From Hamiltosporidium tvaerminnensis FI-OER-3-3 (taxonomy: Eukaryota; Fungi; Microsporidia), in contig JAKIMF020000001.1 in assembly GCA_022605425.2 (NCBI GenBank), positions 1,240,001 through 1,304,000 on the forward strand: a DNA stretch of 64,000 nt, in the 5' to 3' direction. Shown here one piece after another: positions 31,927 through 52,450 of this stretch. The first letter of the stretch is position 1. Each line of letters starts with the position of its first letter. Both the position numbers and the translations under genes were made by a program. The notes below the pieces were generated by a model. It had not been told where the DNA came from and did not search any database. It saw nothing but the letters and a program-made list of their open reading frames with translations.

Positions 31927-33060
31927 ATGATAGGAAAAATAAAAATACAAGATGCTCTAAATAATTCAGCATATAGTGACGATTCATTAAACAAGACATT
32001 GCCATTTCAATCGGATGAATTAATTAGATTGTTTAATTCATTAGAAAAAGGTTCAATGATGAACAAAAAATTATTGCCAGTGCATAGGCATTTAAAGAAT
32101 CAGATGATAACCAAGACTGATGTGAGTGATAAATTAGCAGTCATATGTACAAAAATTGATGCTCTCGCAAATTTTAAGATTTTATTCTGTGAATTTGATT
32201 TAAAATATTTTGTTAGATCCAAAAACTCTATCAATAAATGCACTTCCATTGTAAAGATGGAAAATATTAGAGTGATAAATCAAAAAAACGTGCTGAAAAA
32301 ATATTGTAAAACTAGCTTGAGAGCACTTGAGTATAAAGAAACAATTCAATATTTTTATGATAAGTTAGAATATAATCAGCGAAAAAAAATTTCAAGTTAT
32401 TGTAGATTTAAGTTGTTAGAGAAGCCAAAAAAAAGATGTGATTGTTTTTTGGAAATGTTAAAAAATATTTTTTCATTAGGTAAAAATTCTAAGATAGATC
32501 AAAAAATACCGATAAATCCATTTATATATGAAATCGGAGAGCATTTATTGGCTAATGGTGTAGAGACTGAGGGCATATTTAGAATTTCAGGGAAGGCATC
32601 TGCCTATAGAACCGTTCCAAATGTCTTAAAGAACAACAAAAGATACAATTTAAATGACTTTTCAATCCATGATAATGCTTCCATATTTAAAGCCTATATT
32701 CGCGAAATACTTAACGGATTAATTCCAGAATACATTTGTGGCGAACTAATAGCGACAATCAAAGGGTTTCCATCTCACAAATCTTTATATAATCTCGTAT
32801 TTTATTCAAGATTTTGTTTTGACGAAGATGTACGAAAATTGATAATATTTTTAAAGAAAATGTTTATAACTATAGAAAAACATAGCAAATACAATAGAAT
32901 GACTTTCGAGAACCTTGTTAAAATTTTCACGCCTTCGCTTTTTCCTAACTATAAACATTTTGATATTACTACGATAAACACACAAATAGAGTTTATAGAC
33001 TCTTTATTAAGATCAGATTTGCACGAAGTTCCATTAGAAATAATGAATGATATAAAATGA
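31927..33060 (+). CDS. Rho GTPase-activating protein (C-terminal RhoGAP domain)
   Basis: Intact 377 aa; GVETEGIFRISG with the arginine finger, HDNASIFKAYIREI, NRMTFENLVKIFTPSL; AATAAA just after the stop. Confidence 0.92.
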   Translation: MIGKIKIQDALNNSAYSDDSLNKTLPFQSDELIRLFNSLEKGSMMNKKLLPVHRHLKNQMITKTDVSDKLAVICTKIDALANFKILFCEFDLKYFVRSKNSINKCTSIVKMENIRVINQKNVLKKYCKTSLRALEYKETIQYFYDKLEYNQRKKISSYCRFKLLEKPKKRCDCFLEMLKNIFSLGKNSKIDQKIPINPFIYEIGEHLLANGVETEGIFRISGKASAYRTVPNVLKNNKRYNLNDFSIHDNASIFKAYIREILNGLIPEYICGELIATIKGFPSHKSLYNLVFYSRFCFDEDVRKLIIFLKKMFITIEKHSKYNRMTFENLVKIFTPSLFPNYKHFDITTINTQIEFIDSLLRSDLHEVPLEIMNDIK

Positions 33061-33649: not shown

Positions 33650-36600
33650 ATTAGGTTATTTTATGAAAAAATAATATATAAAATACAGAAAAAAATAATA
33701 TAGGAGAAGAAAAAAAGTTGACCGCGAAAATATAAAAAATGAAGAAATAAAGGCTGTGAACAACTCGGAAATTCGTTTAAAAGAGACAAAAACGTATGAT
33801 AGAGCTGTAATGACTATATCCGAGACACTTCCACCACAACCGACCATCCATAATAACACCTACTCCCCAAATAGCAATACTTTTCGGGTTACTCAGTTCT
33901 GCCTGCTCGATTCAACACTCCCGTCTTCCTGTCCCGATCCTTCTGCGTGTAGACCAGCCAACACAATGGAAAACCTTAATGCACCTGCCATTCCAGAAGG
34001 AAATCGACTGATGCATTGCATTCAATACTTGACTCCGTCACAACCGTAGAGCAGGAATAAGCTAGATCTGCTATTCTAGCAGTGCAAAAGAGGTTTGAGA
34101 GAATGCCTAGAAATAGCTGGTCTGCAATTCTTAGGTACTATAATGGAAAATTTGGTCAGACTGTTGATATCGATGTGTTAAAAAAAATAACACATAATGA
34201 GGCAGAAGGGGAAATAAGGCAAGAAGAGAATGGAGAGCGACGTAGAATCGTCGCTTGTCTCACCGCACCATGTTCCTTAACTGACACTACACTCTATATG
34301 AACCTGAGAAAAAAATTCTTGTGTAAAATCAAGAAACTCTCTGAGAAGGAAATCGGAGATGTAGTAGTCCGAACTAGAAAACTTCCAAATGAATTAGTTG
34401 ATAGTAAAGTTTTGGAACTCATAAATCGGATCACAGGTGAATATGCTAAATTTCATGTGCCTAAGAATGTTAGTGATGCAGCTCGAATCATCCAGGGGGC
34501 CCAGGTATGCTATGACGAGGAAACGCGTAAGGAGAAGCCTAGATCTGCTTGGAAGGAAAACATAGAAAGTAAAATTTCTAAGTTAGTACTTTCCAAAGAT
34601 CTAATCGAGAAGGCTCGTAAACCGGAAAAGCTCTCTACTTCGGAAACGAAAAGTCTCAGAAAAATTATGCGAGAGTTTAATCTAGACTTAAGCAAAGTAA
34701 ATGATCTCTCTGAGGCTTTGGTTAAGAAGAATGAGGCTTAATGTGTACGAGAAAAAAATTACGATGTATGAAAGGCGGAGGAAATTTCGAAAAGAGAATC
34801 GTATGTTTGAGTTATTCTGAGGTCGATTCTATCGAGGGCTATCTGAGCGCGTTGAATCTGAGCATGTGGTTTATCGTGACGAAATTTCAGAATTTTGGTC
34901 TACAATGTGGAACAAAAATGATAAAGTAGTTACATATGATGAGTACTTGATACCTTTCGTGTCAGATACGCAACAGACCACGTTTACTTCACTTGAAGAG
35001 TTTATAGATATTATCAATTGGCTGCCTAACTGGAAAGCCGCTGGAATTGATGGTATTTATAACTTTTACATCAAGAAACTTACGAGCCTTCATAAATATC
35101 TTTACGATATTGTGAAAGCTATATGTTTAGAAGGAACGTTTCAAGCCGATTGGTATTATTGTGGACTTACTTATCTGATACCTAAAGGTACACCAAAGAC
35201 TGGCTCTGATTACAGGCCAATAACCTGTATGTCAAACCTGTATAAACTGACTACAAAATGTGTTACTAAAGTGGTACAGGTTGAGGTGAAAAGACGAGGA
35301 TTACTTTCTGATAATCAGTTGGGGCAGTTAGAGGAGTGCAGGGAGCAAAAAAACAGGCTCTATTGAAGTTGCCATAAATAAAGAGTATGTAAACAATCTT
35401 AAGGCAACAATAAATTGATGTCAAAAAAGCTTATGATTCAATAGATCATGCTTATTTGACCTAATGTATTGAAACCCTTAATTTACCTGATTGGATCCTG
35501 AAATTTTTTAAGGTAATTATATCAAAATGGAAAATTGATATATCAATAGGGCCTGAAAAAATCATGAGCAAGAAGATTGATAGAGGGATTCTGCAAGGAG
35601 TTAGTTTTTCACCATTATTGTTTGTGTTGTGTATGGATCCATTGAGCCGAAAGCTTAATGAAAAATACACAAAAGTGACAGTACAAACAGATGCAGAATC
35701 TCATTCTACCAATCATCTCTTGTTTATTGATGATATTAAGCTCCTTGCTAAATTTGGCCAAACATTAGAAGAAATGACGGAGGAAATTAAAAAGTTTATG
35801 AATAATATAGGATTAGAAATCAACAAAGAGAAGTCAACCACTAATGATCCATGTTGTGAAGATACTGCTACTCTTCTTGAAGGAATAGGTGTTTATAAAT
35901 ACCTTGGAATTATAGCAGATAGCAGAGGAATTCCAACAAGTAAGTCGTTTGAGGAAGTACAGACTAAACTTAGGACACGAGTAGAAAGACTTTGTCGGAC
36001 GAGATTTAATGCAAGAAAAAAATTTTCAAGCCATTAAACAACATGCAATTTCTTTACTAAACTATCATATAGGTGTATTCCGACTAGAACTGGCTGACTT
36101 CTCTAAGTTAGATTATGCGGTACGTGCAGTGTTAGTAAATAACAAAATACATCTACGCCCAGGATGCAAAGAACGTCTATACCTTCCACGTAAAGAACTT
36201 GGAAGAGGTTTACATAGTGTCGAGTTCAAAAGCGAACATATACTTTTGCAACTCTTGGATTGTCTGGAAAAACATAAAGATACATCGACCAGAAGAGCAG
36301 CAATCCTAAAGGTTGAAAATAATAATAAAACCCACCTTTCACTAATTAAAAACTTTTTAAAAATAAAATACGGGTTTGAAGAGGAACTCACAAAGAAGAA
36401 ATTGGAAGAAGCTCAACTAGCTAACCTATATAACGAAATCAAAAACCGAAAACTACATTCAAAGTCATATAGTGCTAGAAATAACGAGCTGGTAATTATA
36501 AATGACTGCTCAAGATGGTTAAAGAAAGGAAGTGTAAGACCACGTGATGAAGCAGTGTTCTGTTATATCCAGGATAGAAATGTATTCTGGGGTGCAGAAG

Positions 36601-37480
36601 GTATGTGTCAACACTGCAACACGTCTAGAAAAACAGTAGACCATTTAGCAACGAGATGTGAAAAAATGCTTGGTCATGACTATACTAGACGACTTAATGA
36701 AGTGGTACGATCTGTACATTTACTCTTCCTGAATAAATATAAGTTTAAGTCTTCGAAACGAATTAGAAGCTACTCAGTTCAAGAAATTCTTGATAACGAA
36801 TATGCAGAGATAAGAGTGGACACCAGAATAAAAACTGATGTCAAGATTCGGTGTAACAGACCAGATATATTTATCTTAGACAAGAGACAGAATATATAAC
36901 ACTCATTTATGTAGGAATCACATCCTAAGACTCTCTTCAAATAGTTGAAACAGAGAAGCTTAGGAAGTATGACCTATTAGCAAATGAGTTAGGTCTTATT
37001 TATAAATGTAGTGTAGAGAAATTCCTTATGTGATGACATGGGATGGTATTGTGACAAAATACCATAAGACGTATGTTAAAAGACTGCAAATACCCATAAA
37101 TGTAGAGGCAAATATACTATCCATACCACTCGAGAAGAGGATCGAAACAATTTCTTTTGATCGACGAAGAGGGCTTGAGTCTGGACCAAATGCCGAACAG
37201 AACCGGGGAAGAGAATCATTAAGTGTTGTTTTAGGAGCTGAGATGCATGAACAATCAACACCCCCGTTAAAGCAAGTAGTCAACGAGAAAGATGATGTTA
37301 AAAGGGAAAATACAAAAAATATTTACCCCGTATTTTGGATGGCATAACCACAGCAAAGGAACCAACAACTAATACAAAGGAAGAGTTGGAGGGGGAGGGG
37401 GAGATAGAAATGGTTGAAATGGTGTAAAGAATTATTTTAAAGAGAAAAACTTGTTAACTCCTAAAATTTTATTTAATAAA
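33650..37480 (+). mobile_element. Near full-length, inactivated single-ORF non-LTR retrotransposon with RT and restriction-like endonuclease (R4/Dong-like)
   Basis: RT motifs NWKAAGIDGI, DYRPITCM, IDVKKAYDS, RGILQG, LLFIDDIKL, YKYLG; CCHC knuckle CQHC...DHLATRC; RLE motifs RPDI...VGIT...KYDLL. Split by several frameshifts and stops. Ends approximate. Confidence 0.93.
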
Positions 37481-41255: not shown

Positions 41256-41591
41256 TTAACCCCTCTTTAAAACACTCCTATCCTCTCAAAATCCTATACC
41301 CCTTTACAACACTACTATTATAACTAACACTACCCTCTATACTTAATACCCCATTACTACCCTTTTAACTTAACACCCCCTTTACAAACATACTACTACT
41401 ACCCCTTTACAAACACTTATAACTAACACCCCTTTACTACCCTTTTAACTTAACACCCCCTTTACAAACATACTACTACTACCCCTTTATAATACCTCCC
41501 ACTAACACCCCTTTACTACCCTATATACTTAACACCCCCTTTACAAACATACTACTACCCCTTTATAATACCCTCCCACTAACACCCCCTT
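41256..41591. repeat. C-rich TAACACCCC/TACCCC minisatellite upstream of the helicase
   Basis: Repeated taacacccc and ctacccct with a ~79-nt higher-order unit present about three times; ends in cccccttATG. Confidence 0.9.
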
Positions 41592-44500
41592 ATGTTCCCA
41601 TACAACCTCCCAATATCAAAATACTCCACAAAAATATTAACCACTCTTAAAAATAACAACACTCTTATAATAACTGGCAGTACAGGAACAGGTAAATCAA
41701 CATATACACCACTACTTCTACATAACAATGGATTCAACAAAATACTTGTTATTGAACCACGTCGTATAGCAGTTAAATCTATTTACAATACGTTATATCA
41801 TATTATTACAGACACAGGATATAACAAAGAGAAGTTTAAAGAAAATAGAGATATTAAAGAGAATGGAGATAATGGAGAAGATAAGAGGGATACTAAAGAA
41901 AACAGAGGTAGTAAAGAGAATAAAGGTATAAGTAAAGAGAATAATAAATATATAAGGGAAGAGAATAATAGAGATAATAAGAACCATACCAATACTTATA
42001 CTAATACCAATACTAATAATATTCTTGGTTATAAGATGAGATTTGATAGTCATAACAGTAAGAATTGTAATATTAAAATAGTAACAGATGGTACGTTTCT
42101 TAACGAGGTACTTAAGAGTAGTAAAGGTAGAGAAAGTAAGAATAGTAGATGTAATAATATATATCCTAACCCTACCCCTAACCCTAATAAATGCATAAAC
42201 AACTGTAATACTGATATATCTATTAGTAATAACAAATATCATAACCCTAACCCTAACCCTAATAGATGCATAAACAATATAAGTAATAACCCTATATCTA
42301 CTAGTAGTAATATATATCCTAACCCTACCCCTAATATATGCATAAACAACTGTAATACTGACATACCTATTAGTAATAACAAATATCATAACCCTAACCC
42401 TAACCCTAACAATATAAGTAATAACCCTATGTCTACTAGTAGTAATATATATCCTAACCCTAACCCTAACCCTAGTATATGCATAAACAATATAAGTAAT
42501 AACAATACCAAGAATAATATAACTATTAATAATATTCTTCCTTACTCTGTTATTATAATAGATGAAGTGCATGAACGTTCTATACGTACAGATATTATAA
42601 TATCATATCTTAAATATATAAATTTTAAAGGTAAATTAATACTTATGAGTGCTACTCTTAATACACATATATTTATAAAATATTTTAATTGTAATATTAT
42701 TACTATAAATGATATTTGTTATCCTATTAAGTATATTTATAGTGAATGTGCTGTTAGTGATTATATAATAGAAGCATACCAGAAAATAAAGGGTATAGTA
42801 AGTGGTAAGGATATAGATATGTTTAAGGGTGGTGAGGGTGTTAATGATAGTAGTAGGTTAGAGGGTGTTAATGATAGTAGGGATAGAGTAGGGGGTGTTA
42901 GTAAGAGTAGTAGGTTAGAGGGTGTTAATGATAGTAGTAGATTGGAGGGTGTTAGTAAGAGTAGTAGGTTAGAGGGTGTTAATGATAGTAGTAGGTTAGA
43001 GGGTGTTAATGATAGTAGGGATAATTATAAGGGTGTTAGTAAAAGTATAGATAATTATAAGGGTGTTAGTAATAAAGATAGTGTTATAAAGGGTGTTAGT
43101 CATAGTAGGGATATGATAGAGGGTGTTATTAATAATAGTAGTAAACAACAGGGTGTTATTAACTGTATAGATAATTATAAGGGTGTTAATGATAAGAGTA
43201 GTAAACAACAGGGTGTTAATAACAGTAGTAATAATTATCACCCTGTTAATAATTTGAATAATAAAGATAACCTTATAGATAACACTAAAGATAATAACCC
43301 TAATACCATTAAAGACATTCTTGTCTTCCTTCCTGGTGAAGATGATATCAATGACTTATATAAGTTATTAAGACGTATACCTAATATAAGTGTTATTAAG
43401 ATGCATTCTACACTAACAGATACAGAACAGTCAATAGTATATAACGATAGTAGTAATAGAGATAATAAGAATATTAATAAGGATAGTACTGGTAATAAGA
43501 TATACAATAATATACCTAACCCTAACTTAAACGATTATACTAATAACAGTAGTAATACTATATTACCTAACCCTACCCTAACCCTAAATAAATGCATAAA
43601 CAATTCTATTAGTAATACTAACAGTAGTAATACTATATTACCAATACCTAACCCTAACCTAACCCTAAATACATGCATAAACAATTCTATTAGTAATACT
43701 AACAGTAGTAATACTATATTACCTAACCCTACCCTAACCCTAAATACATGCATAAACAATTCTATTAGTAATATTAACAGTAGTAATACTATATTACCTA
43801 ACCCTACCCTAACCCTAAATAAATGCATAAACAATTCTATTAGTAATACTAACAGTAGTAATACTATATTACCTAACCCTACCCTAACCCTAAACACATG
43901 CATAAACAGTTCTACCCTAACCCTAAATACACGTGTTATTCTCTCTACTAATATATGTGAAACCTCCCTTACAATACCAGGTATACGTTATGTTATAGAC
44001 TGTGGTATATCAAAAATAAAAGTAACTTATAATAATGTTAATTATATAGGTTGTATAATAAGTAATAAATTATCTTCTGATCAAAGAGCAGGTAGATGTA
44101 ATAGAATGAGTAGTGGTATATGTTATAGGTTATATACCAAGGAGATGTACAATATGATGTGTAGTAGTATATATGATAATAATAGTAAGAGTAATACTAA
44201 GAGTATTATGAGTAACACTAATACTAAGAGTAATACTAAGAGTAATACTAAGAGTAATACTAACACTAATACTAAGAGTAATATCACCAACCCTAATATA
44301 ACTAACAACCCTAATACCACTACTCCTCTTGTTAATACTACTCCTGAGATACAGAGGTGTAGTGTTATTGATACTTTATTATTTCTTATTGTTAATTATA
44401 TAGATGTTGGTAAGTATTGTTATATAAATAAACCTTATAAAGATAATTGTAAGGAAAGTATAAGAAGGTTATTAGAAATAGGATGTATTACAGTAAATAA

Positions 44501-46217
44501 AGGGTATTTTGGTAACACTGGGGTTATATTAGAGGGTGTTAATCATAATAGTAGTAGGTTAGAGGGTGTTAGTAACAGTAGGGATAGAGTAGGGGGTGTT
44601 AATGATAAGAGTAGGTTAGAGGGCATTAATGATAAGAGTAGGTTAGAGGGCATTAATGATAAGAGTATGTTAGAGGGTGTTAGTAACAGTAGGGATAGAG
44701 TAGGGGGTGTTAGTAATATGAGTAGGTTAGAGGGTGTTAATCATAAGAGTATGTTAGAGGGTGTTAGTAACAGTAGGGATAGAGTAGGGGGTGTTAATCA
44801 TAAGAGTAGGTTAGAGGGTGTTAATCATAAGAGTATGTTAGAGGGTGTTAGTAACAGTAGGGATAGAGTAGGGGGTTTTAGTAATATGAGTTCAAATAAA
44901 CAACAGGGTGTTAATTATAGTAGTAGTGATTATAACCCCTTTAATACCAGTATTAATGAACAAGACCCTATTAGTAACAGTACCAATGACCGACACCCTT
45001 TATATATAAGTACTCATAAACAACACCCTCTTAACACCCCTACTAATAAACAACACCCCTTTAACACCACTACTATCACACCCATACCCACTAACACCCC
45101 TACTAATACACCCACCTCTACTAACACTACCATTAACACCCCTAACTATAATATACCCTTTATTCCTACTACTTATGGTATTTCCTTACTAAAACACCCC
45201 TTTGATGTTAATACTTCACATTTCTATTCTTTAAGTATAAATAATAATATAAATAACGTATCAATACTATTATTATCTTTAATATCACAAGATAGTTTTA
45301 ATTTTCTTAGTAAAGCTAATAAGTATAAATGTAGTAGTGATATAGAATATCTTATAAATATAATGAGTGAGTATATAAGAGTAATGGATAAGAGTAATAA
45401 GGGTGAGATAAGTGATGTAAGTGAGAGGGATGTGGGTGATAAGAATAATAAGAGGAATAGGAGTAATAAGGATGAGATAAGTGAGAGGGATGTGGGTGAT
45501 AAGAATAATAAGAGGAATAGGAGTAATAAGGATGAGATAAGTGATAATATAGGTAACAGTAATAAAGGTGATAATAATAAAGGTATAAGTAATAGTACAA
45601 ATATAAGGGATAAGTATGACTTTTGTAGAGAATATAACTTACCTGTTAAAGGTATGGATACAGGGTATCGCTTATACAAGCATCTTAGTAGGAAAGGTTA
45701 TAGTAATAGAGGTAGGGGTGTTAATAATAGAGGTATATTAGAGGGTGTTAGTAACACTAAAGATAAACAAGAGGGTGTTATTGATAGTAAAGATAAAGAA
45801 CAGGGTGTTAATGATAAGAGTAATAAGGAAGAGGGTGTTATTAAAACTACTAATAAACAACAGGGTGTTATTAAAGGTAAAGATACAGAAGAGGGTGTTA
45901 ATAACAACAATATAAAACAACACCCCTTTAAAAAACATCCATATGAACAACACCCTCTTAACAACAACAATATAGATAAACACCCCTTTAACAATACTGA
46001 TACTTTTACATTACATAAAGTGTTTAGTAAGGCTTTTAATTATAATATAAGTTTAAGACAGAAAGATGGTTCTTATATTTGTATAAGAAGTGGTGTTAAA
46101 GTATATATACATCCTAGTAGTGCTTGTTATAATAAAAGGTATAAAAAGATAGTTTATGTTGATTTGTATGGAGGGGATAGGATATATACAAGGATAGTAA
46201 GTAGGTATTATGGGTGA
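41592..46217 (+). CDS. DEAH/RHA-family RNA helicase (Dhr2/DHX33- or Prp43/Prp22-like) with about 8 in-frame repeat insertions
   Basis: Motifs in order: GSTGTGKST, EPRRIAV, GYKMRFD, TDGTFL, DEVHERS, MSAT, LVFLPGEDDI, STNICETSLTIPGIRYVIDCG, QRAGRCNR, PEIQR, IHPSS; uninterrupted 1541-aa ORF. Confidence 0.95.
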   Translation: MFPYNLPISKYSTKILTTLKNNNTLIITGSTGTGKSTYTPLLLHNNGFNKILVIEPRRIAVKSIYNTLYHIITDTGYNKEKFKENRDIKENGDNGEDKRDTKENRGSKENKGISKENNKYIREENNRDNKNHTNTYTNTNTNNILGYKMRFDSHNSKNCNIKIVTDGTFLNEVLKSSKGRESKNSRCNNIYPNPTPNPNKCINNCNTDISISNNKYHNPNPNPNRCINNISNNPISTSSNIYPNPTPNICINNCNTDIPISNNKYHNPNPNPNNISNNPMSTSSNIYPNPNPNPSICINNISNNNTKNNITINNILPYSVIIIDEVHERSIRTDIIISYLKYINFKGKLILMSATLNTHIFIKYFNCNIITINDICYPIKYIYSECAVSDYIIEAYQKIKGIVSGKDIDMFKGGEGVNDSSRLEGVNDSRDRVGGVSKSSRLEGVNDSSRLEGVSKSSRLEGVNDSSRLEGVNDSRDNYKGVSKSIDNYKGVSNKDSVIKGVSHSRDMIEGVINNSSKQQGVINCIDNYKGVNDKSSKQQGVNNSSNNYHPVNNLNNKDNLIDNTKDNNPNTIKDILVFLPGEDDINDLYKLLRRIPNISVIKMHSTLTDTEQSIVYNDSSNRDNKNINKDSTGNKIYNNIPNPNLNDYTNNSSNTILPNPTLTLNKCINNSISNTNSSNTILPIPNPNLTLNTCINNSISNTNSSNTILPNPTLTLNTCINNSISNINSSNTILPNPTLTLNKCINNSISNTNSSNTILPNPTLTLNTCINSSTLTLNTRVILSTNICETSLTIPGIRYVIDCGISKIKVTYNNVNYIGCIISNKLSSDQRAGRCNRMSSGICYRLYTKEMYNMMCSSIYDNNSKSNTKSIMSNTNTKSNTKSNTKSNTNTNTKSNITNPNITNNPNTTTPLVNTTPEIQRCSVIDTLLFLIVNYIDVGKYCYINKPYKDNCKESIRRLLEIGCITVNKGYFGNTGVILEGVNHNSSRLEGVSNSRDRVGGVNDKSRLEGINDKSRLEGINDKSMLEGVSNSRDRVGGVSNMSRLEGVNHKSMLEGVSNSRDRVGGVNHKSRLEGVNHKSMLEGVSNSRDRVGGFSNMSSNKQQGVNYSSSDYNPFNTSINEQDPISNSTNDRHPLYISTHKQHPLNTPTNKQHPFNTTTITPIPTNTPTNTPTSTNTTINTPNYNIPFIPTTYGISLLKHPFDVNTSHFYSLSINNNINNVSILLLSLISQDSFNFLSKANKYKCSSDIEYLINIMSEYIRVMDKSNKGEISDVSERDVGDKNNKRNRSNKDEISERDVGDKNNKRNRSNKDEISDNIGNSNKGDNNKGISNSTNIRDKYDFCREYNLPVKGMDTGYRLYKHLSRKGYSNRGRGVNNRGILEGVSNTKDKQEGVIDSKDKEQGVNDKSNKEEGVIKTTNKQQGVIKGKDTEEGVNNNNIKQHPFKKHPYEQHPLNNNNIDKHPFNNTDTFTLHKVFSKAFNYNISLRQKDGSYICIRSGVKVYIHPSSACYNKRYKKIVYVDLYGGDRIYTRIVSRYYG

Positions 46218-47523
46218 GAGGAGTAGTGATAGAAATAAGAGGGTGTTGATTACAATAACGATGTATTAGAGGGTGTTGATTATAGAGGTAATTAATAAGA
46301 GGGTGTTAATGAAAAGTAGTAATAAATAAGAGGGTGTTGATGATAAGTAGTAATAAATAAGAGGGTGTTGATTACAATAACGATGATTAGAGTGGGTTAA
46401 TTATAGAGGCAATTAATAAGAGGGTGTTAATGATAAGTAGTAATAAATAAGATGGTGTTAGTAGTATAAGTAATGAATAAGAGTGTGTTAATTATAATAT
46501 AGTATATTATAAGGGTGTTAATGATAGAGGTAATGAATAAGAGGGTGTTAATGATAAGTAGTAATAAATAAGATGGTGTTAGTAGTATAAGTAATGAATA
46601 AGAGTGTGTTAATTATAATATAGTATATTATAAGGGTGTTAATTATATGTAGTAATGTATTGGAGGGTGTTAATTATATGTTGTAATGAATAAGAGGGTG
46701 TTAATTATATTATTAGTATATTATAAAGGTTTTAATTATATGTAGTAATGTATTAGAGGGTGTTAATTATAAGTTGTAATGAATAAGAGGGTGTTAATTA
46801 TAATATAGTATATTAAAGGGTGTTAGTAATGGATATAATAAATAATAGGGTTTTAATAATAGTAGTATGATAATAGAAATATTAAAGGGGTTAACTTGTA
46901 TATCACTACTAATAATAGATTTAAAGTAATTTAAATAAAAAATATAAAATTTAAAGTCTTATTTATACAATTATAATATTAAGGGTGTTAGATATAAGGA
47001 GTAATAAATGGGTGTTAGTATATAAGTAAATTGTTTATGTTTTAAAGGGGTGTTAATTACTATTACGATTTATTATATATTATCACCTTTTAATACATTC
47101 TAATAATATTGATGGTTAAAGGGGTGTTAATTGCTATTGGGATTTATAATATATTAACACCCTTTAAAACATTTACAATCTACCTATATATTAACACCCT
47201 TTAAAACATTTACAATCTACCTATATATTAACATCCTTTAAAACATTTACAATATACTAATCTATTAACACCCTTTAATACTTTATAAATCTACTTGTCT
47301 ATTAACACCCTTTAATACATATACAATATACTTATTTATTAACACCCTTTAAACCATAAACAATATATTTATCTATTAACACCCTTTAACACCTTTACAA
47401 TATACTAATCTATTAACACCCTTTAAAACATATAAATCTACTTATCTATTAACACCCTTTAATACTTTATAAATCTAATTGTCTATTAACACCCTTTATA
47501 ATACTCCCTTATAGATTAACACC
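46218..47523. repeat. Bipolar intergenic array: GAGGGTGTTA units (46218-47130) then TTAACACCC units (47153-47523)
   Basis: Read directly; polarity flips at about 47060-47155 between the convergent helicase and PAP2 genes. Confidence 0.92.
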
Positions 47524-49944
47524 CTATATTTTTATACCTTTAACCTTTAATTCCTTACAAAGTAAATAAAACATAATAACACTACTACATATACCTAATA
47601 ACCCTCCACATACTACATCATGCATATGATGTCTATTATCATATATACGACTAACACCTACAGCACTACTTATAGAAATACCTATAAATATTATTAAAAT
47701 TAAAGGTATAAACCTAAGTATTTTAGTATTCTTTAAAGTAATTCTATTTATGCGAGTTTCAAGGGTTAGGGAAGGGTTAGTAGGGTTATTGGTAAGGTTA
47801 TGGTTAATACTTTTGTTAGAAAGGTGATAGTTATTACTAACACCCTGTTGTTTATAGGTACTATCAATAACACCCTGTTGTTCATTAGTACTGATGTTAA
47901 CACCCTGTTGTTTATGTGTACTATCAATAACACCCTTATAGTCATCTATACTGTTACTAACACCCTTATAACCATCAATAGTATCATTAACACCCTCTTC
48001 CATACCTTCGAACTTACTACTAGTATTAACACCCTTATAATCCTCTATACTGTTATTAACACCCTCTTCAATACCTTCTAACTTATTACTAGTATTAACA
48101 CCCTTATAATCATCTATAATGTTATTAACACCCTCTTCCATACCTTCTAACTTACTACTAGTATTAACACCCTTATAATCATCTATAATGTTATTAACAC
48201 CCTCTTCCATACCTTCGAACTTACTACTAGTATTAACACCCTTATAATCCTCTATACTGTTATTAACACCCTCTTCCATACCTTCTAACTCTTTACTACT
48301 AGTATTAACACCCTTATAATCATCTATACTATTATTAACACCCTCTTCCATACCTTCTAACTTACTACTATAACTATCCCCTCCATACTTCTTATATATA
48401 ACAAGTATTATATATACAATACTACAAAACATAGAAGATGTATGTCCAGAAGGAAAACTCTTTCTACCTTCTCTTATAATAAAAGGTTTACCTGTACATA
48501 TACCTAATACTGGTATACATCTATCTATAAAGTCAGGTCTTAATTCTCCTATAATTATTTTTAAAATACCTATCAGTGCATTGTTAAGTGTATATGAAGT
48601 TATAAAGTAAAGAAGAAGTAAATAGATTGCAATATTATTATCAGGGTTGGGGTTGTTAGTACTACTCTTATCAATAACAGGGTGTTGTTTGAAAGTACTG
48701 TTGCTAAAACCCTCTTCTTTACTACTCTTCATATTAACACCCTGTTGTTTATTATTATTGTTAATAACACCCTCCTCTTTACTACTCTTCATATTAACAC
48801 CCTGTTGTTTATTATTATTGTAAATAACACCCTCTTCTTTACTAATCTTCATATTAACAACCTGTTGTTTATTATTATTGTTAATAACACCCTCTTCTTT
48901 ACTACTCTTCATATTAACACCCTGTTGTTTATTATTATTGTTACTAACACCCTCTTCTATACTAATAGAGTTATTAACACCCTGTTGTTTATTATTATTG
49001 TAAATAACACCCTCTTCTTTACTAATCTTCATATTAACAACCTGTTGTTTATTATTATTGTTACTAACACCCTCTTCTTTACTACTCTTCATATTAACAC
49101 CCTGTTGTTTATTATTATTGTTACTAACACCCTCTTCTTTACTACTCTTCATATTAACAACCTGTTGTTTATTATTATTGTAAATAACACCCTCATCTAT
49201 ACTAATAGAGTTATTAACACACTCTAATACACTACTATCACTAACACCCTTTAATACATTACTCTTATAATTAACACCCTCTTCTTTACTACTATGACTA
49301 ACACCGTTATAATTACCACCCTTATAATTACTCTTATAATTAACACCCTCTTCTATACTAATACAGTTACTAACACCCTTATAATTACTACTATCCCTAA
49401 CACCCTCTTCTATACTAATACAGTTACTAACACCCTCTAATACACTACTCTTATAATTAACACCCTCTAATACACTACTCTTATAATTAACACCCTCTAA
49501 TACACTACTATCATTAACACCCTCTAATACACTACTAGTATTAACACCCTCTAATACACTACTCTTATAATTACCACCCTTATAATTACTCTTATAATTA
49601 ACACCCTCTTCTTTACTAATACAGTTACTAACACCCTTATAATTACTACTATCCCTAACACCCTCTTCTATACTAATACAGTTACTAACACCCTCTTCCT
49701 TACTAATACAGTTACTACTAATTGACCTGTTAAATACCTTTTCTATAACAATAATAAGAATAATAGGTATTATAAAAGAAATAACAATCAATTCATTATT
49801 ATTAATAATTTCTTTATTCTTATATTTATATTGTATAGAAATATCTGTTATTTTATAATGTCTATGTCTTGGTTCTATATAATTCGTTATTAAAGAAATA
49901 AGTGTTGTAGATATTAATAATATGTAAAGATTGTAGTTTACCAT
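47524..49944 (-). CDS. PAP2-family lipid phosphate phosphatase (DPP1/LPP1-like) with two large in-frame repeat insertions
   Basis: C1 KIIIGELRP, C2 SFPSGH, C3 SRIYDNRHHMHD; hydrophobic TM segments; intact 806-aa ORF. Confidence 0.95.
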   Translation of the reverse strand: MVNYNLYILLISTTLISLITNYIEPRHRHYKITDISIQYKYKNKEIINNNELIVISFIIPIILIIVIEKVFNRSISSNCISKEEGVSNCISIEEGVRDSSNYKGVSNCISKEEGVNYKSNYKGGNYKSSVLEGVNTSSVLEGVNDSSVLEGVNYKSSVLEGVNYKSSVLEGVSNCISIEEGVRDSSNYKGVSNCISIEEGVNYKSNYKGGNYNGVSHSSKEEGVNYKSNVLKGVSDSSVLECVNNSISIDEGVIYNNNKQQVVNMKSSKEEGVSNNNNKQQGVNMKSSKEEGVSNNNNKQQVVNMKISKEEGVIYNNNKQQGVNNSISIEEGVSNNNNKQQGVNMKSSKEEGVINNNNKQQVVNMKISKEEGVIYNNNKQQGVNMKSSKEEGVINNNNKQQGVNMKSSKEEGFSNSTFKQHPVIDKSSTNNPNPDNNIAIYLLLLYFITSYTLNNALIGILKIIIGELRPDFIDRCIPVLGICTGKPFIIREGRKSFPSGHTSSMFCSIVYIILVIYKKYGGDSYSSKLEGMEEGVNNSIDDYKGVNTSSKELEGMEEGVNNSIEDYKGVNTSSKFEGMEEGVNNIIDDYKGVNTSSKLEGMEEGVNNIIDDYKGVNTSNKLEGIEEGVNNSIEDYKGVNTSSKFEGMEEGVNDTIDGYKGVSNSIDDYKGVIDSTHKQQGVNISTNEQQGVIDSTYKQQGVSNNYHLSNKSINHNLTNNPTNPSLTLETRINRITLKNTKILRFIPLILIIFIGISISSAVGVSRIYDNRHHMHDVVCGGLLGICSSVIMFYLLCKELKVKGIKI

Positions 49945-50553
49945 ATGTGTGTGTGTTATGTAGGAGAATAGAGGGGTAGTGTGTTACTAAATAATAATGA
50001 GGGGTGGTGATGTGGGTATAGGGGTATTAATTAAAGTATCCATAGATAAAGGGGTATTAAGTATAAGGATAGTAAATAAAGGGGTATTAATTAAAGTATC
50101 CATAGATAAAGGGGTATTAAGTAAAGGATAGTAAATAAAGGGGTATTAAGTATAAGGATAGTAAATAAAGGGGTATTAAGTATTAGTATTAGTAGATAAA
50201 GGGGTATTAATTAAAGTATCCATAGATAAAGGGGTATTAAGTATAAGGATAGTAAATAAAGGGGTATTAAGTATAAGGATAGTAGATAAAGGGGTATTAA
50301 GTATTAGTATTAATAGATAAAGGGGTATTAATTATCTGTATTAATAGATAAAGGGTAAAATTTTTAAGGATAGTAAATAAAGGGTCAAATCTATAAGAGA
50401 TATAATTTATATTGCTAACACTCCTTTATATCCTATATCACCCCTCCTACATCCTATATCCTATATCACCCCTCCCTCATATCCCTCATATCCCTCATAT
50501 CCCTCATATCCTATATCACCCCTTCTCCTTAACCCTTTAATTTAACAACCCCT
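49945..50553. promoter_or_regulatory. Divergent promoter region built from mirrored repeats
   Basis: AAAGGGGTATTAA units at about 50020-50385, short AT core at about 50386-50415, ATATCCCTC/CACCCCT units at about 50416-50553; CCC motif before both ATGs. Confidence 0.7.
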
Positions 50554-51294
50554 ATGTTTCAAACAGAAGAACTTACAGGAACAACAATAATGGCTATATC
50601 TTATAAAGATGGTGTTATCTTAGGAGCAGACACACGTACAAGTATGGGTAATTATATACCTAACAGAATAACAGATAAAATAACTAAAATAACACCTAAT
50701 ATATACTGTTGTAGATCAGGATCATCTGCAGACACACAAGCTGTATGTAGAGTAGTTAAAGGGTTAATAGAGAAGTACATATATATAGAGGAGTATGATA
50801 GTAGTGTTGTTGGTAGGAGTGGGAGTGGTAGTGGTAATGGTGGTAGTGGTAATAACAATAGTACTAACACCCCTTCTACTAACAGTAGTACTAACACCCC
50901 TCACCCTCACACTAACACCCCTCACACTAACAACACTAACAACACTCCAGTTCGCACTGCTGCTATCCTTTGTAAGAATGTTATTTACAAATATAAAAAC
51001 CTTTTAGCTTCTTTAATAATAGCAGGTTATGATAATATAGAAGGTGGTAGTGTATATGTTATAGGATTAGGTGGTTATTTAATAAGAAGAGAATGGGCTT
51101 TAGGTGGTAGTGGTTCTCCTTATATTTATGGTTATGTAGATAAGATGTATAGAAATGATTTTACTTTTGAAGAAAGGGTTATGTTTGTTAAAGAGTGTGT
51201 TTCTATGGCTATTGGTAGGGATACTTCTTCTGGTGGATGTGTTAGGATTATGGTTATTAGTAAGGAGGGTATTAAGAGGTATTATAGTGAGTAG
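50554..51294 (+). CDS. PRE3: 20S proteasome beta-1 subunit with a ~50-aa in-frame repeat insertion
   Basis: Short propeptide ending G/TTIMA (catalytic Thr1), GADTRTS, NRITDKIT, CCRSGSSADTQ, GGSGSPYIYGY, RDTSSGG. Confidence 0.95.
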   Translation: MFQTEELTGTTIMAISYKDGVILGADTRTSMGNYIPNRITDKITKITPNIYCCRSGSSADTQAVCRVVKGLIEKYIYIEEYDSSVVGRSGSGSGNGGSGNNNSTNTPSTNSSTNTPHPHTNTPHTNNTNNTPVRTAAILCKNVIYKYKNLLASLIIAGYDNIEGGSVYVIGLGGYLIRREWALGGSGSPYIYGYVDKMYRNDFTFEERVMFVKECVSMAIGRDTSSGGCVRIMVISKEGIKRYYSE

Positions 51295-52450
51295 GTGAGG
51301 GAGGGTGTTATAGTGAGTAGGGTGAGGGAGGGTGTTAGTATAAAGGGTGAGGGAGAGGGTGTTAGTATATATGTAATAAGATAGTAAAGGTAATAGGTGT
51401 TAGTATATATGTAATAAGATAGTAGAGGTAATAGGTGTTAGTAATATAGTATGGTAGTAGTAAAGGTAATAAAGACTTTCTTTGTTAATAATCAGTAATT
51501 TATACTAATAGGTGTTATTTATACTACTAGGTGTTATTTATACTACTAGGTTTTATTTATATTACTAGGTGTTATTTATACTAATAGGTGTTATTTATAC
51601 TACTAGGTGTTATTTATACTACTAGGTGTTATTTATACTAATAGGTGTTATTTATACTAATAGGTGTTATTTATACTACTAGGTGTTATTTATACTACTA
51701 GGTGTTATTTATACTAATAGGTGTTATTTATACTAATAGGTGTTATTTATACTACTAGGTGTTATTTATACTACTAGGTGTTATTTATACTAATAGGTGT
51801 TATTTTACTGTTATTTCTCTTTTACTGTTATTTATACTACTAGGTGTTATTTATACTACTAGGTGTTATTTTACTGTTATTTCTCTTTTACTGTTATTTA
51901 TACTAATAGGTGTTATTTATACTAATAGGTGTTATTTTACTGTTATTTCTCTTTTACTGTTATTTATACTAATAGGTGTTATTTATACTAATAGGTGTTA
52001 TTTTACTGTTATTTCTCTTTTACTGTTATTTATACTAATAGGTGTTATTTATACTACTAGGTGTTATTTATACTACTAGGTGTTATTTTACTGTTATTTC
52101 TCTTTTACTGTTATTTATACTACTAGGTGTTATTTATACTACTAGGTGTTATTTTACTGTTATTTATACTAATAGGTGTTATTTATACTAATAGGTGTTA
52201 TTTATACTACTAGGTGTTATTTTACTATTATTTATACTAATAGGTGTTATTTATACTAATAGGTGTTATTTATACTAATAGGTGTTATTTTACTGTTATT
52301 TCTCTTTTATTGTTATTTATACTAATAGGTGTTATTTTACTGTTATTTATCTATTACTGTTACTTATATTACCTACAGTCTTATTACTTATATTTATACT
52401 ACTTACTTACTTATACTACTTACTTACTTATATTACCTACAGTCTTATTA
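51295..52450. repeat. G/T-rich array downstream of PRE3, including a 20-nt satellite TATACTA(A/C)TAGGTGTTATTT
   Basis: gagggtgtta units at 51295-51470; 20-mer tandem units at about 51500-52340, interleaved with tactgttatttctctt. Confidence 0.92.

What the first reader, a model, noticed from the sequence alone, without database searches (positions are those of the whole stretch)
41256..52450. Bipolar telomere-like repeat system: arrays read G-rich then C-rich, like end-to-end telomere fusions, inside and between housekeeping genes
Seen: one motif family (GGGTGTTA/TAACACCC, plus TTAGGG/TAACCC) fills this 11-kb island and forms no arrays elsewhere in the window. Both intergenic spacers flip from G-rich to C-rich (about 47140 and 50400). 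So do nearly all intragenic insertions: helicase about 41820-42020, 42118-42535, 42810-43305, 43445-43930, 44160-44340, 44500-45150 and 45695-46005; PAP2 about 47765-48385 and 48630-49720; PRE3 about 50795-50950. Each conserved gene segment therefore has C-rich repeats at its 5' side and G-rich repeats at its 3' side, whichever strand codes. Known: telomerase extends 3' ends with the G-rich strand, and joining two such ends gives a G-rich then C-rich junction. Inference: recurrent breaks may be extended at both ends by a telomerase-like or templated polymerase and rejoined, with in-frame products surviving. Plain slippage would not impose this polarity. Caveats: units are spaced by AT-rich linkers (about 24-33 nt period), the array at 41256 lacks a G-rich partner, and insertion 45385-45605 is mostly G-rich only.
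Basis: partly seen in the sequence, partly recalled or inferred. Interest (0 to 1): 0.93.

Follow-up and report, generated by a model that had tools for sequence, protein, structure and literature searches.

The report
Bipolar mutation field around in-gene repeats
In a water-flea parasite, essential genes are stuffed with repeat insertions that each run G-rich then C-rich, and the same strand bias rewrites the silent codon positions 100-200 bases either side, which points to repeated DNA damage centred on each insertion rather than to fused telomeres.

Summary
The window is from the microsporidian Hamiltosporidium tvaerminnensis. The polarity is real: 74 of 79 in-frame insertions on 10 contigs, and 155 of 161 in proteins of two species, start G-rich and end C-rich. 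The fusion model fails. Chromosome ends are pure TTAGGG without GGGTGTTA. In-gene junctions keep one orientation and register with GGG changed to CCC (42 such junctions genome-wide, 0 head-to-head). 22 of 25 insertions without the motif are polar too. The bias also continues into synonymous sites of conserved codons (G and T before an insertion, C and A after, still seen 30 codons away). This is the footprint expected from deamination of single-stranded DNA exposed on both sides of a recurrent break or stalled fork (inferred; breaks not shown), with minisatellite units copied between loci. A telomere link survives only in a minor unit: CCCTAA runs with a fixed 13-nt tail at 22 loci. I found no paper describing this; only Asn-rich MCM expansions and fungal gene-end skew are published. 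The scan noted the same pattern earlier on other DNA of this genome.

The parts
41256..41591 (+). C-only array (27-nt unit, 80-nt higher period) ending in the CCC start element directly before the helicase ATG; no G-rich partner upstream
41592..46217 (+). DEAH-box RNA helicase, 1541 aa, 9 non-repeat segments (six verified as consecutive parts of a helicase profile) split by 8 in-frame insertions; third positions run C then G within segments
41862..42020 (+). helicase insertion 1, polar without octamer; switch about 41981
42117..42518 (+). helicase insertion 2: short G part, then CCCTAA runs with the fixed tail (NPNPNKCIN peptide); switch about 42151
42828..43307 (+). helicase insertion 3: 27/30-nt octamer units (LEGV, YKGV, KQQGV) then an in-register CCC unit; switch about 43228
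43443..43931 (+). helicase insertion 4: 75-nt repeats carrying the telomeric unit; 306 nt shorter in one other sample; switch about 43499
44175..44324 (+). helicase insertion 5, 12-nt unit, no octamer; 36 nt shorter in two other samples; switch about 44254
44532..45146 (+). helicase insertion 6, G units then same-orientation C units; switch about 44928
45375..45602 (+). helicase insertion 7, G-rich only (exception to the rule)
45702..46004 (+). helicase insertion 8, 30-nt G units then in-register C units; switch about 45897
46218..47523 (.). spacer between convergent genes: 31-nt G array, then 37-nt C array; the one clearly inverted pair; switch about 47141
47524..49944 (-). PAP2 lipid phosphatase, 806 aa, two large insertions (about 47765-48385 and 48630-49720; switches about 47830 and 48703); an insertion-free ortholog lies in the same divergent arrangement with PRE3 in another microsporidian-like contig
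49945..50553 (.). spacer between divergent genes: 30-nt G array (variant core GGGGTATTA), then C tract ending in the CCC start element; switch about 50414
50554..51294 (+). proteasome beta1 (PRE3), 246 aa, one insertion of about 48 aa (about 50795-50950) absent from 11 orthologs; switch about 50849
51295..52450 (+). downstream array, 19-nt unit with core AGGTGTTA, G-rich with a short C-rich end after about 52331

Best explanation
Each insertion and each spacer in these gene islands is the centre of a local, strand-symmetric mutation field, and the arrays are minisatellites growing inside it. SHOWN: the strand that runs 5' to 3' into an insertion is enriched in G and T and depleted of C and A, in the repeats and at silent and replacement sites of the flanking conserved codons, fading over 100-200 nt. 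SHOWN: a small set of 27/30-nt units with the core RGGTGTTA is shared by unlinked loci, lies in a fixed order along each insertion, turns over fast between isolates and species, and flips its central GGG to CCC in place. INFERRED: the field comes from recurrent exposure of exactly those strands as single-stranded DNA, as the 3' tails of a resected break centred in the insertion or as lagging-strand templates of forks pausing there from either side. C-to-T and A-to-G deamination then pushes the exposed strand towards G/T-only words, which is why the result looks telomeric. INFERRED: with no Ku, repair runs through homology; G/T-rich tails slip, duplicate and copy units from other arrays, and template switching at the near-palindromic core flips GGG/CCC, each form surviving on the side where it is not exposed. 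Purifying selection keeps in-frame products in tolerant positions. Telomerase may have seeded one minor unit but does not make the polarity.
For: Polarity 74/79 insertions, 64/69 outside the window, p 4e-14; 22/25 without any motif; 59/61 in H. magnivora and 96/100 in H. tvaerminnensis database proteins. Four-fold G:C 19:82 just after versus 53:4 just before an insertion; G at NNR sites 0.18 to 0.43; C at NNY sites 0.32 to 0.11. At 20 or more codons from an edge, stratified by codon family and next base: G:A z -5.1, C:T z 7.8, A:T odds ratio 2.2, z 6.9; 56 of 63 segments agree. Same geometry as mutated C left and mutated G right of resected breaks in yeast (PMC6786661). In-register junctions. 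GGG/CCC differences and unit gain/loss between orthologous arrays while flanks are about 99.5% identical. Ku absent, Y-family polymerase present, weak Spo11-like match. SNP density 2.8-fold higher within 45 nt of edges, p 0.03, only 20 sites.
Against: No break, ssDNA or fork-pause data; direction of mutation could not be polarised (no close outgroup). Deamination alone does not explain why one 7-mer, GGTGTTA, is over-represented in conserved codons in all three frames (36 versus 21 expected, and TAACACC 19 versus 3), which hints at selection for a binding site or patchy conversion; some of those hits may be undetected mini-insertions. Published recombination rates for the genus are very low (PMC6944219). 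Why only some gene clusters are affected is unexplained. Loci outside the window were picked by motif searches, not at random.
Confidence: 0.45

Rival explanations
1. Oriented binding sites: TAACACCC is an extended form of the microsporidian CCC start element. A general factor binds it, insertions behave as ectopic bidirectional promoters or nucleosome-free regions, and the skew is the fungal gene-end skew repeated at each of them, partly kept by selection.
For: CCC elements precede most start codons examined, in two genes as the full octamer (PMC5499648). The motif is the top enriched 7-mer in conserved codons. Fungal genes are C-rich at 5' and G-rich at 3' ends (PMC3315797).
Against: Polar insertions without the motif. 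Four other PRE3 loci from relatives have the CCC element but no arrays and no strong field. Non-template-strand deamination from a bidirectional promoter predicts the opposite sign (my inference). No T-box or other obvious binder annotated. In the published fungal pattern A/T skew is flat; here it flips.
Confidence: 0.22
2. One reading: telomerase or a templated polymerase extends both ends of a break with G-rich repeat and the ends are joined head to head.
For: TERT domain in a 911-aa frame. CCCTAA runs with a fixed tail at 22 loci on 13 contigs, in the predicted orientation where I could read them. Seven of eight chromosome-end flanks examined are unrelated to each other, as after healing. 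Precedent: TERC-ITS (PMC8537989).
Against: Octamer absent from eight telomere loci. 0 head-to-head junctions against 42 same-orientation ones. TTAGGG/CCCTAA not enriched in conserved codons. Synonymous gradient outside insertions.
Confidence: 0.1
3. Transcription-phase mutational bias (initiation versus termination, sense plus antisense R-loops) resets at each insertion because polymerase pauses or restarts there.
For: Known gene-level pattern in fungi (PMC3315797). The G part of insertions tends to be longer on the coding strand.
Against: The field has the same sign on both sides regardless of coding strand and resets every 200-450 nt inside single ORFs.
Confidence: 0.1
4. A short mobile element with an ordered G-arm and C-arm (foldback or MITE-like) inserts in frame; polarity is its anatomy.
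For: Unit types have a fixed order (LEGV 0.30, YKGV 0.40, QQGV 0.60, HP types 0.73-0.80). 14-18-mers are shared by up to 14 of 23 unlinked regions.
Against: No common ends or fixed length. Arms are not inverted repeats in genes. Motif-free insertions are polar. It cannot explain the synonymous gradient.
Confidence: 0.07
5. Protein-level selection for an acidic/Gly-rich then Pro/Thr-rich linker, or protein splicing (inteins, as floated for MCM).
For: Insertions are hydrophilic and in frame; the amino-acid order is reproducible.
Against: Same polarity in non-coding spacers and at synonymous sites. No intein domain in Pfam scans.
Confidence: 0.03

Closest known systems
Opposite GC skew at 5' and 3' gene ends in unicellular fungi (McLean and Tirosh 2011, PMC3315797)
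   Same: C-rich coding strand at starts, G-rich at ends, reaching four-fold sites and amino-acid choice; makes every spacer read G then C
   Different: Here skew reaches plus or minus 1, resets at every in-gene insertion, includes an A/T flip, is limited to islands and comes with repeat expansion
Single-switch mutation clusters at bidirectionally resected breaks (PMC6786661)
   Same: C lost on the top strand left of the centre, G lost on the right
   Different: One-off kilobase events with an added deaminase in yeast; here an evolutionary equilibrium over 100-200 nt; breaks not demonstrated
Interstitial telomeric sequences and TERC-ITS (PMC8537989, PMC2246262)
   Same: Short TTAGGG runs inside chromosomes; one unit has a fixed non-telomeric flank
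   Different: Only a minority unit; the main octamer is not telomeric; telomerase RNA unknown; arrays are translated
Asn-rich in-frame expansions in Hamiltosporidium MCM proteins (PMC6944219); low-complexity insertions of Plasmodium (from memory)
   Same: In-frame low-complexity insertions splitting conserved domains
   Different: No polarity, shared unit family or flanking substitution field was reported
Recombination-driven GC-rich minisatellites (PMC2599865; hotspot-centred skew in mouse recalled from memory, paper not retrievable)
   Same: Shared G-rich core, unit transfer between arrays, fast turnover
   Different: Here inside essential ORFs, bipolar, with in-place core flipping
Microsporidian CCC/GGG-like start element (PMC5499648, PMC2803860)
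   Same: CCC just before ATG, in two genes embedded in the octamer
   Different: Hundreds of copies inside ORFs and at 3' ends in the opposite orientation

Membership tests
Head-to-head telomere fusion | Repeat identical to the species telomere | tested here: not met
   Eight chromosome-end loci: TTAGGG only, 0 octamers
Head-to-head telomere fusion | Right arm is the reverse complement of the left arm | tested here: not met
   Direct identity 0.62 versus inverted 0.45, 29/31; 42 versus 0 genome-wide; exception: spacer 46218-47523 aligns best inverted
Interstitial telomeric sequence (minor unit only) | At least 2-3 perfect telomeric hexamers at internal sites | tested here: met
   also window 42242-42262 and 42389-42410
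TERC-ITS | Flank matches the telomerase RNA; one-step insertion against an empty ortholog | not testable with these tools
Fungal gene-end GC skew | C bias at 5' and G bias at 3' including synonymous sites | tested here: met
   Window genes: NNY C 0.36 versus 0.00, NNR G 0.07 versus 0.47
Fungal gene-end GC skew | One gradient per gene and flat A/T skew | tested here: not met
   Gradient resets at each insertion; A/T flips
ssDNA deamination footprint at breaks | G+T excess on the strand with its 3' end towards the centre | tested here: met
   All three synonymous classes
ssDNA deamination footprint at breaks | Breaks or ssDNA physically mapped there; polarised C-to-T and A-to-G flux | not testable with these tools
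   Only contigs of DNA runs available; 20 SNPs unpolarised
Intein | Hint domain and splice motifs | tested here: not met
   No such Pfam match in the three proteins
MITE or foldback element | Terminal inverted repeats, common ends, target-site duplication | tested here: inconclusive
   In-gene arms not inverted; ends not shared by eye; no empty-site allele available to test duplications
Minisatellite | Tandem 10-100-nt units with copy-number polymorphism | tested here: met

The most novel reading that the evidence does not exclude
Hamiltosporidium runs a self-reinforcing break-and-repair process at fixed sites inside essential genes: the same process that sets gene-end skew in fungi, here visible at single-insertion resolution. 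It rewrites neighbouring protein sequence in a position-dependent way, and telomerase occasionally copies its own RNA (template plus a 13-nt flank) into these sites, where it is translated.
Probability: 0.2. Interest if true: 0.9.

Novelty: new variant of a known kind. Interest (0 to 1): 0.72.

Why it matters
The cause of opposite GC skews at fungal gene ends is open. Here the same skew is far stronger and restarts at insertions in the middle of ORFs, which separates it from transcription start and stop and makes break-, fork- and promoter-based explanations directly testable in a parasite kept in the laboratory with many sequenced isolates. The field also shifts amino-acid composition in conserved domains (Pro, Thr, His, Leu after an insertion; Gly, Glu, Val, Arg, Met before), a non-adaptive force that can mislead phylogeny and selection tests. 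In the affected ORFs sampled, insertions make up about 49% of the residues. The fixed tail beside the telomeric runs is a concrete lead to the telomerase RNA, which I did not find described for microsporidia.

Tried and rejected
Counting close G..C versus C..G motif pairs (258 versus 58) is inflated by a coincidental match in a non-LTR retrotransposon coding region; replaced by a unit-specific count (42 versus 17) and by edge-based tests. A self-training amino-acid segmentation drifted and called G-halves conserved; replaced by one that groups residues without regard to G versus C. Helicase homolog search returned only distant HrpA/DHX34 proteins. TTAGGG as attractor of synonymous choices: above shuffles but ranked about 30 of 658 hexamers, and the hexamer itself is not enriched. 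Rev1-driven C insertion: Rev1 is reported lost in microsporidia (10.1101/2025.09.02.673565); the single Y-family gene was not typed. T-box binding (resemblance recalled from memory): no T-box in the published domain table. Canonical G-quadruplex motifs are few (3 with loops up to 7). Rfam blank. The mouse hotspot-skew paper could not be retrieved.
Full report
Source. The assembly has 21,638,905 bases in 17 contigs. This matches the published Hamiltosporidium tvaerminnensis assembly (21.64 Mb, 17 contigs, telomere TTAGGG; PMC10542269). The window's PRE3 clusters with an H. tvaerminnensis protein and lies on a contig of 2,681,470 bases, the length of scaffold 1 in the published table. The organism is a parasite of Daphnia.

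Observation. The octamer fills 41256-52450 and is nearly absent from the rest of the window. GC skew swings between -1 and +1 while AT skew does not mirror it inside the arrays. Both spacers and 10 of 11 listed insertions go from G-rich to C-rich. The ORFs are open through all insertions. Six helicase segments between insertions map to consecutive parts of a helicase profile. The PRE3 insertion is missing from 11 orthologs. An insertion-free PAP2 ortholog sits divergently next to PRE3 in another contig, so the insertions are derived. Independent assemblies and contigs of four runs carry the same blocks with in-frame length differences, so this is not an artefact.

Extent. One 10-mer of the family occurs 1353 times in the genome against 12 for the reversed control. 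In loci from 10 contigs, segmented without regard to G versus C, 74 of 79 complete insertions are more G-rich at the start than at the end (64 of 69 outside the window); 52 start G-rich and end C-rich, and 1 does the reverse. The background rate is 0.50. These loci came from motif searches, half of the junction-based ones chosen for the contrary order, so they are not a random sample. In database proteins the same order shows at amino-acid level in 59 of 61 H. magnivora and 96 of 100 H. tvaerminnensis insertions (partly the same genes). All 55 proteins that matched the repeat peptide were from these two species (only the top 8000 candidates were scored). PRE3 loci of four other organisms have the CCC start element but no arrays and no strong skew.

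The fusion model fails. (1) Eight chromosome-end loci are TTAGGG with no octamer. (2) In genes, the first C core follows the last G core at the unit period (21 at 30 nt, 6 at 60 nt), and its flanks match the G unit directly rather than inverted in 29 of 31 cases. Genome-wide, the KQQGV unit is followed by its same-orientation CCC variant 42 times on 15 contigs, 33 of them at exactly 30 nt, and by its own reverse complement 0 times; the reverse order occurs 17 times, many in tandem doublets. Selection against hydrophobic inverted frames could thin inverted junctions in genes but not in spacers. The core AACA-GGG-TGTT is a near-palindrome, so changing GGG to CCC mimics an inversion of the octamer. 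Intermediates are rare (79 GGG, 23 CCC, 9 others), and orthologous CPSF1 arrays of the two species differ by such swaps in otherwise identical units. (3) 22 of 25 insertions with no octamer and no telomeric run are polar. The helicase-PAP2 spacer is the exception that does align best as an inverted pair.

The polarity is a substitution field. In 75 conserved segments between insertions, four-fold sites have G:C of 19:82 in the first fifth and 53:4 in the last (p 7e-21). G at NNR sites rises from 0.18 to 0.43 and C at NNY sites falls from 0.32 to 0.11. The effect persists 30 codons from either edge, and from 12 codons inward the A:T ratio flips in the same sense (odds ratio 2.2, z 6.9 at 20 codons, stratified by codon family and next base). 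So the strand running into an insertion is G+T-rich and the strand leaving it is C+A-rich. Residue usage follows. Control genes without insertions show no such gradient, though samples are small. G+T enrichment is what C-to-T and A-to-G deamination of single-stranded DNA produces (established knowledge from mitochondrial and bacterial strand asymmetry). The exposed strands would be the 3' tails of a break resected from the insertion centre, the geometry shown in yeast (PMC6786661), or lagging-strand templates of forks pausing there. GGGTGTT contains no C or A and is therefore a sink under this pressure, which would explain the telomere-like look by convergence (inference).

Second layer: units that move between loci. 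14-18-mers are shared by up to 14 of 23 unlinked regions. Unit types keep an order along the insertion from most G-rich to most C-rich. Arrays differ strongly between species while flanks differ at 20 of 3458 sites. Copying between arrays during homology-based repair fits the absence of Ku (also PMC1851970 for Encephalitozoon). One result is not explained by deamination: GGTGTTA is the most over-represented 7-mer in conserved codons even when the next base is held fixed, in all three frames, while TTAGGG is not.

What remains of telomerase. TERT is present. Runs of 2-5 CCCTAA followed by a fixed 13-nt tail occur 55 times at 22 loci on 13 contigs, 7 of them in this helicase gene, and in the polarity-consistent orientation wherever I could read the context. 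Twelve of the loci read were selected for the hexamer, but the tail was not selected. The tail contains a G on the C-rich strand, so it was copied rather than evolved by skew. It could be telomerase RNA next to the template, as in some TERC-ITS (PMC8537989), or one ancestral unit spread like the others. I could not test this.

Comparison and novelty. The literature found reports Asn-rich in-frame expansions in Hamiltosporidium MCM proteins of unknown nature (PMC6944219) and opposite gene-end skews in fungi of unknown cause (PMC3315797). Searches found no description of bipolar insertions, a shared unit family or a flanking synonymous field. It works like a break-centred strand-asymmetric mutation footprint combined with recombination-driven minisatellites. 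It is not a telomere fusion and not an intein, and it meets only part of the definition of gene-end skew. Earlier scan notes on other pieces of this genome describe the same polarity and the core flip; they are not independent evidence, and they show the feature was noted before.

Limits. Segment edges are model-based and some conserved segments may hide small insertions. No RNA run held the region.

Noticed in passing
L035, L036, L039, L042, L046, L048, L050, L057 (chromosome ends): Telomeres abut unique-looking sequence with no shared subtelomere; only L042 and L057 share about 1.4 kb (99.9%) and seem to differ in the last few dozen bases before the repeat, as if telomeres were added at different points.
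   Followed up: partly
window 51280-51294: PRE3 stops after RYYSE, about 8 residues earlier than most orthologs (YFVPGNEI), inside the G-rich zone; the field may erode gene ends.
   Followed up: no
L020 and L021 (G000 C1 near 1,171,000 and 1,268,000): Two island loci about 97 kb apart share an identical 53-nt junction in inverted orientation and mirrored motif spacing, suggesting an inverted segmental duplication; one was left out of the statistics.
   Followed up: partly
L001, L004, L006; window 34082-37347: Abundant non-LTR retrotransposon with a restriction-like endonuclease region; its coding sequence holds a chance GGGTGTT..AACACCC pair. A reverse transcriptase fragment lies at window 35564-36037.
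   Followed up: partly
L001, L004, window 31927-33060: Housekeeping genes beside retrotransposon fragments (histone H3, ERO1-like, a WD40 protein, RhoGAP) have no insertions and no skew field, so the phenomenon depends on region, not on gene class.
   Followed up: partly
L014, L015, L019, L032-L034 (G000 C1 852,000-865,400): A large gene resembling the spliceosomal protein Prp8 (by eye) is riddled with polar insertions and appears in several reading frames in the assembly, either polishing errors in repeats or real frameshifts.
   Followed up: no
island G-rich strands: Dinucleotide signature unlike the rest of the genome: TA, GT, AG, GG up; AA, TT, GA, TG, GC, CG down.
   Followed up: partly
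G000 C13 589,958-590,140: Weak Spo11/Top6A-like match (25.5 bits, just under cut-off, 320-aa frame) although the published domain table lists none for this species.
   Followed up: no
L069 (SRR23617210): Compact 51% GC contig with CCC start elements and PAP2-PRE3 synteny, probably an unnamed microsporidian; its PRE3 is the closest non-Hamiltosporidium hit.
   Followed up: partly
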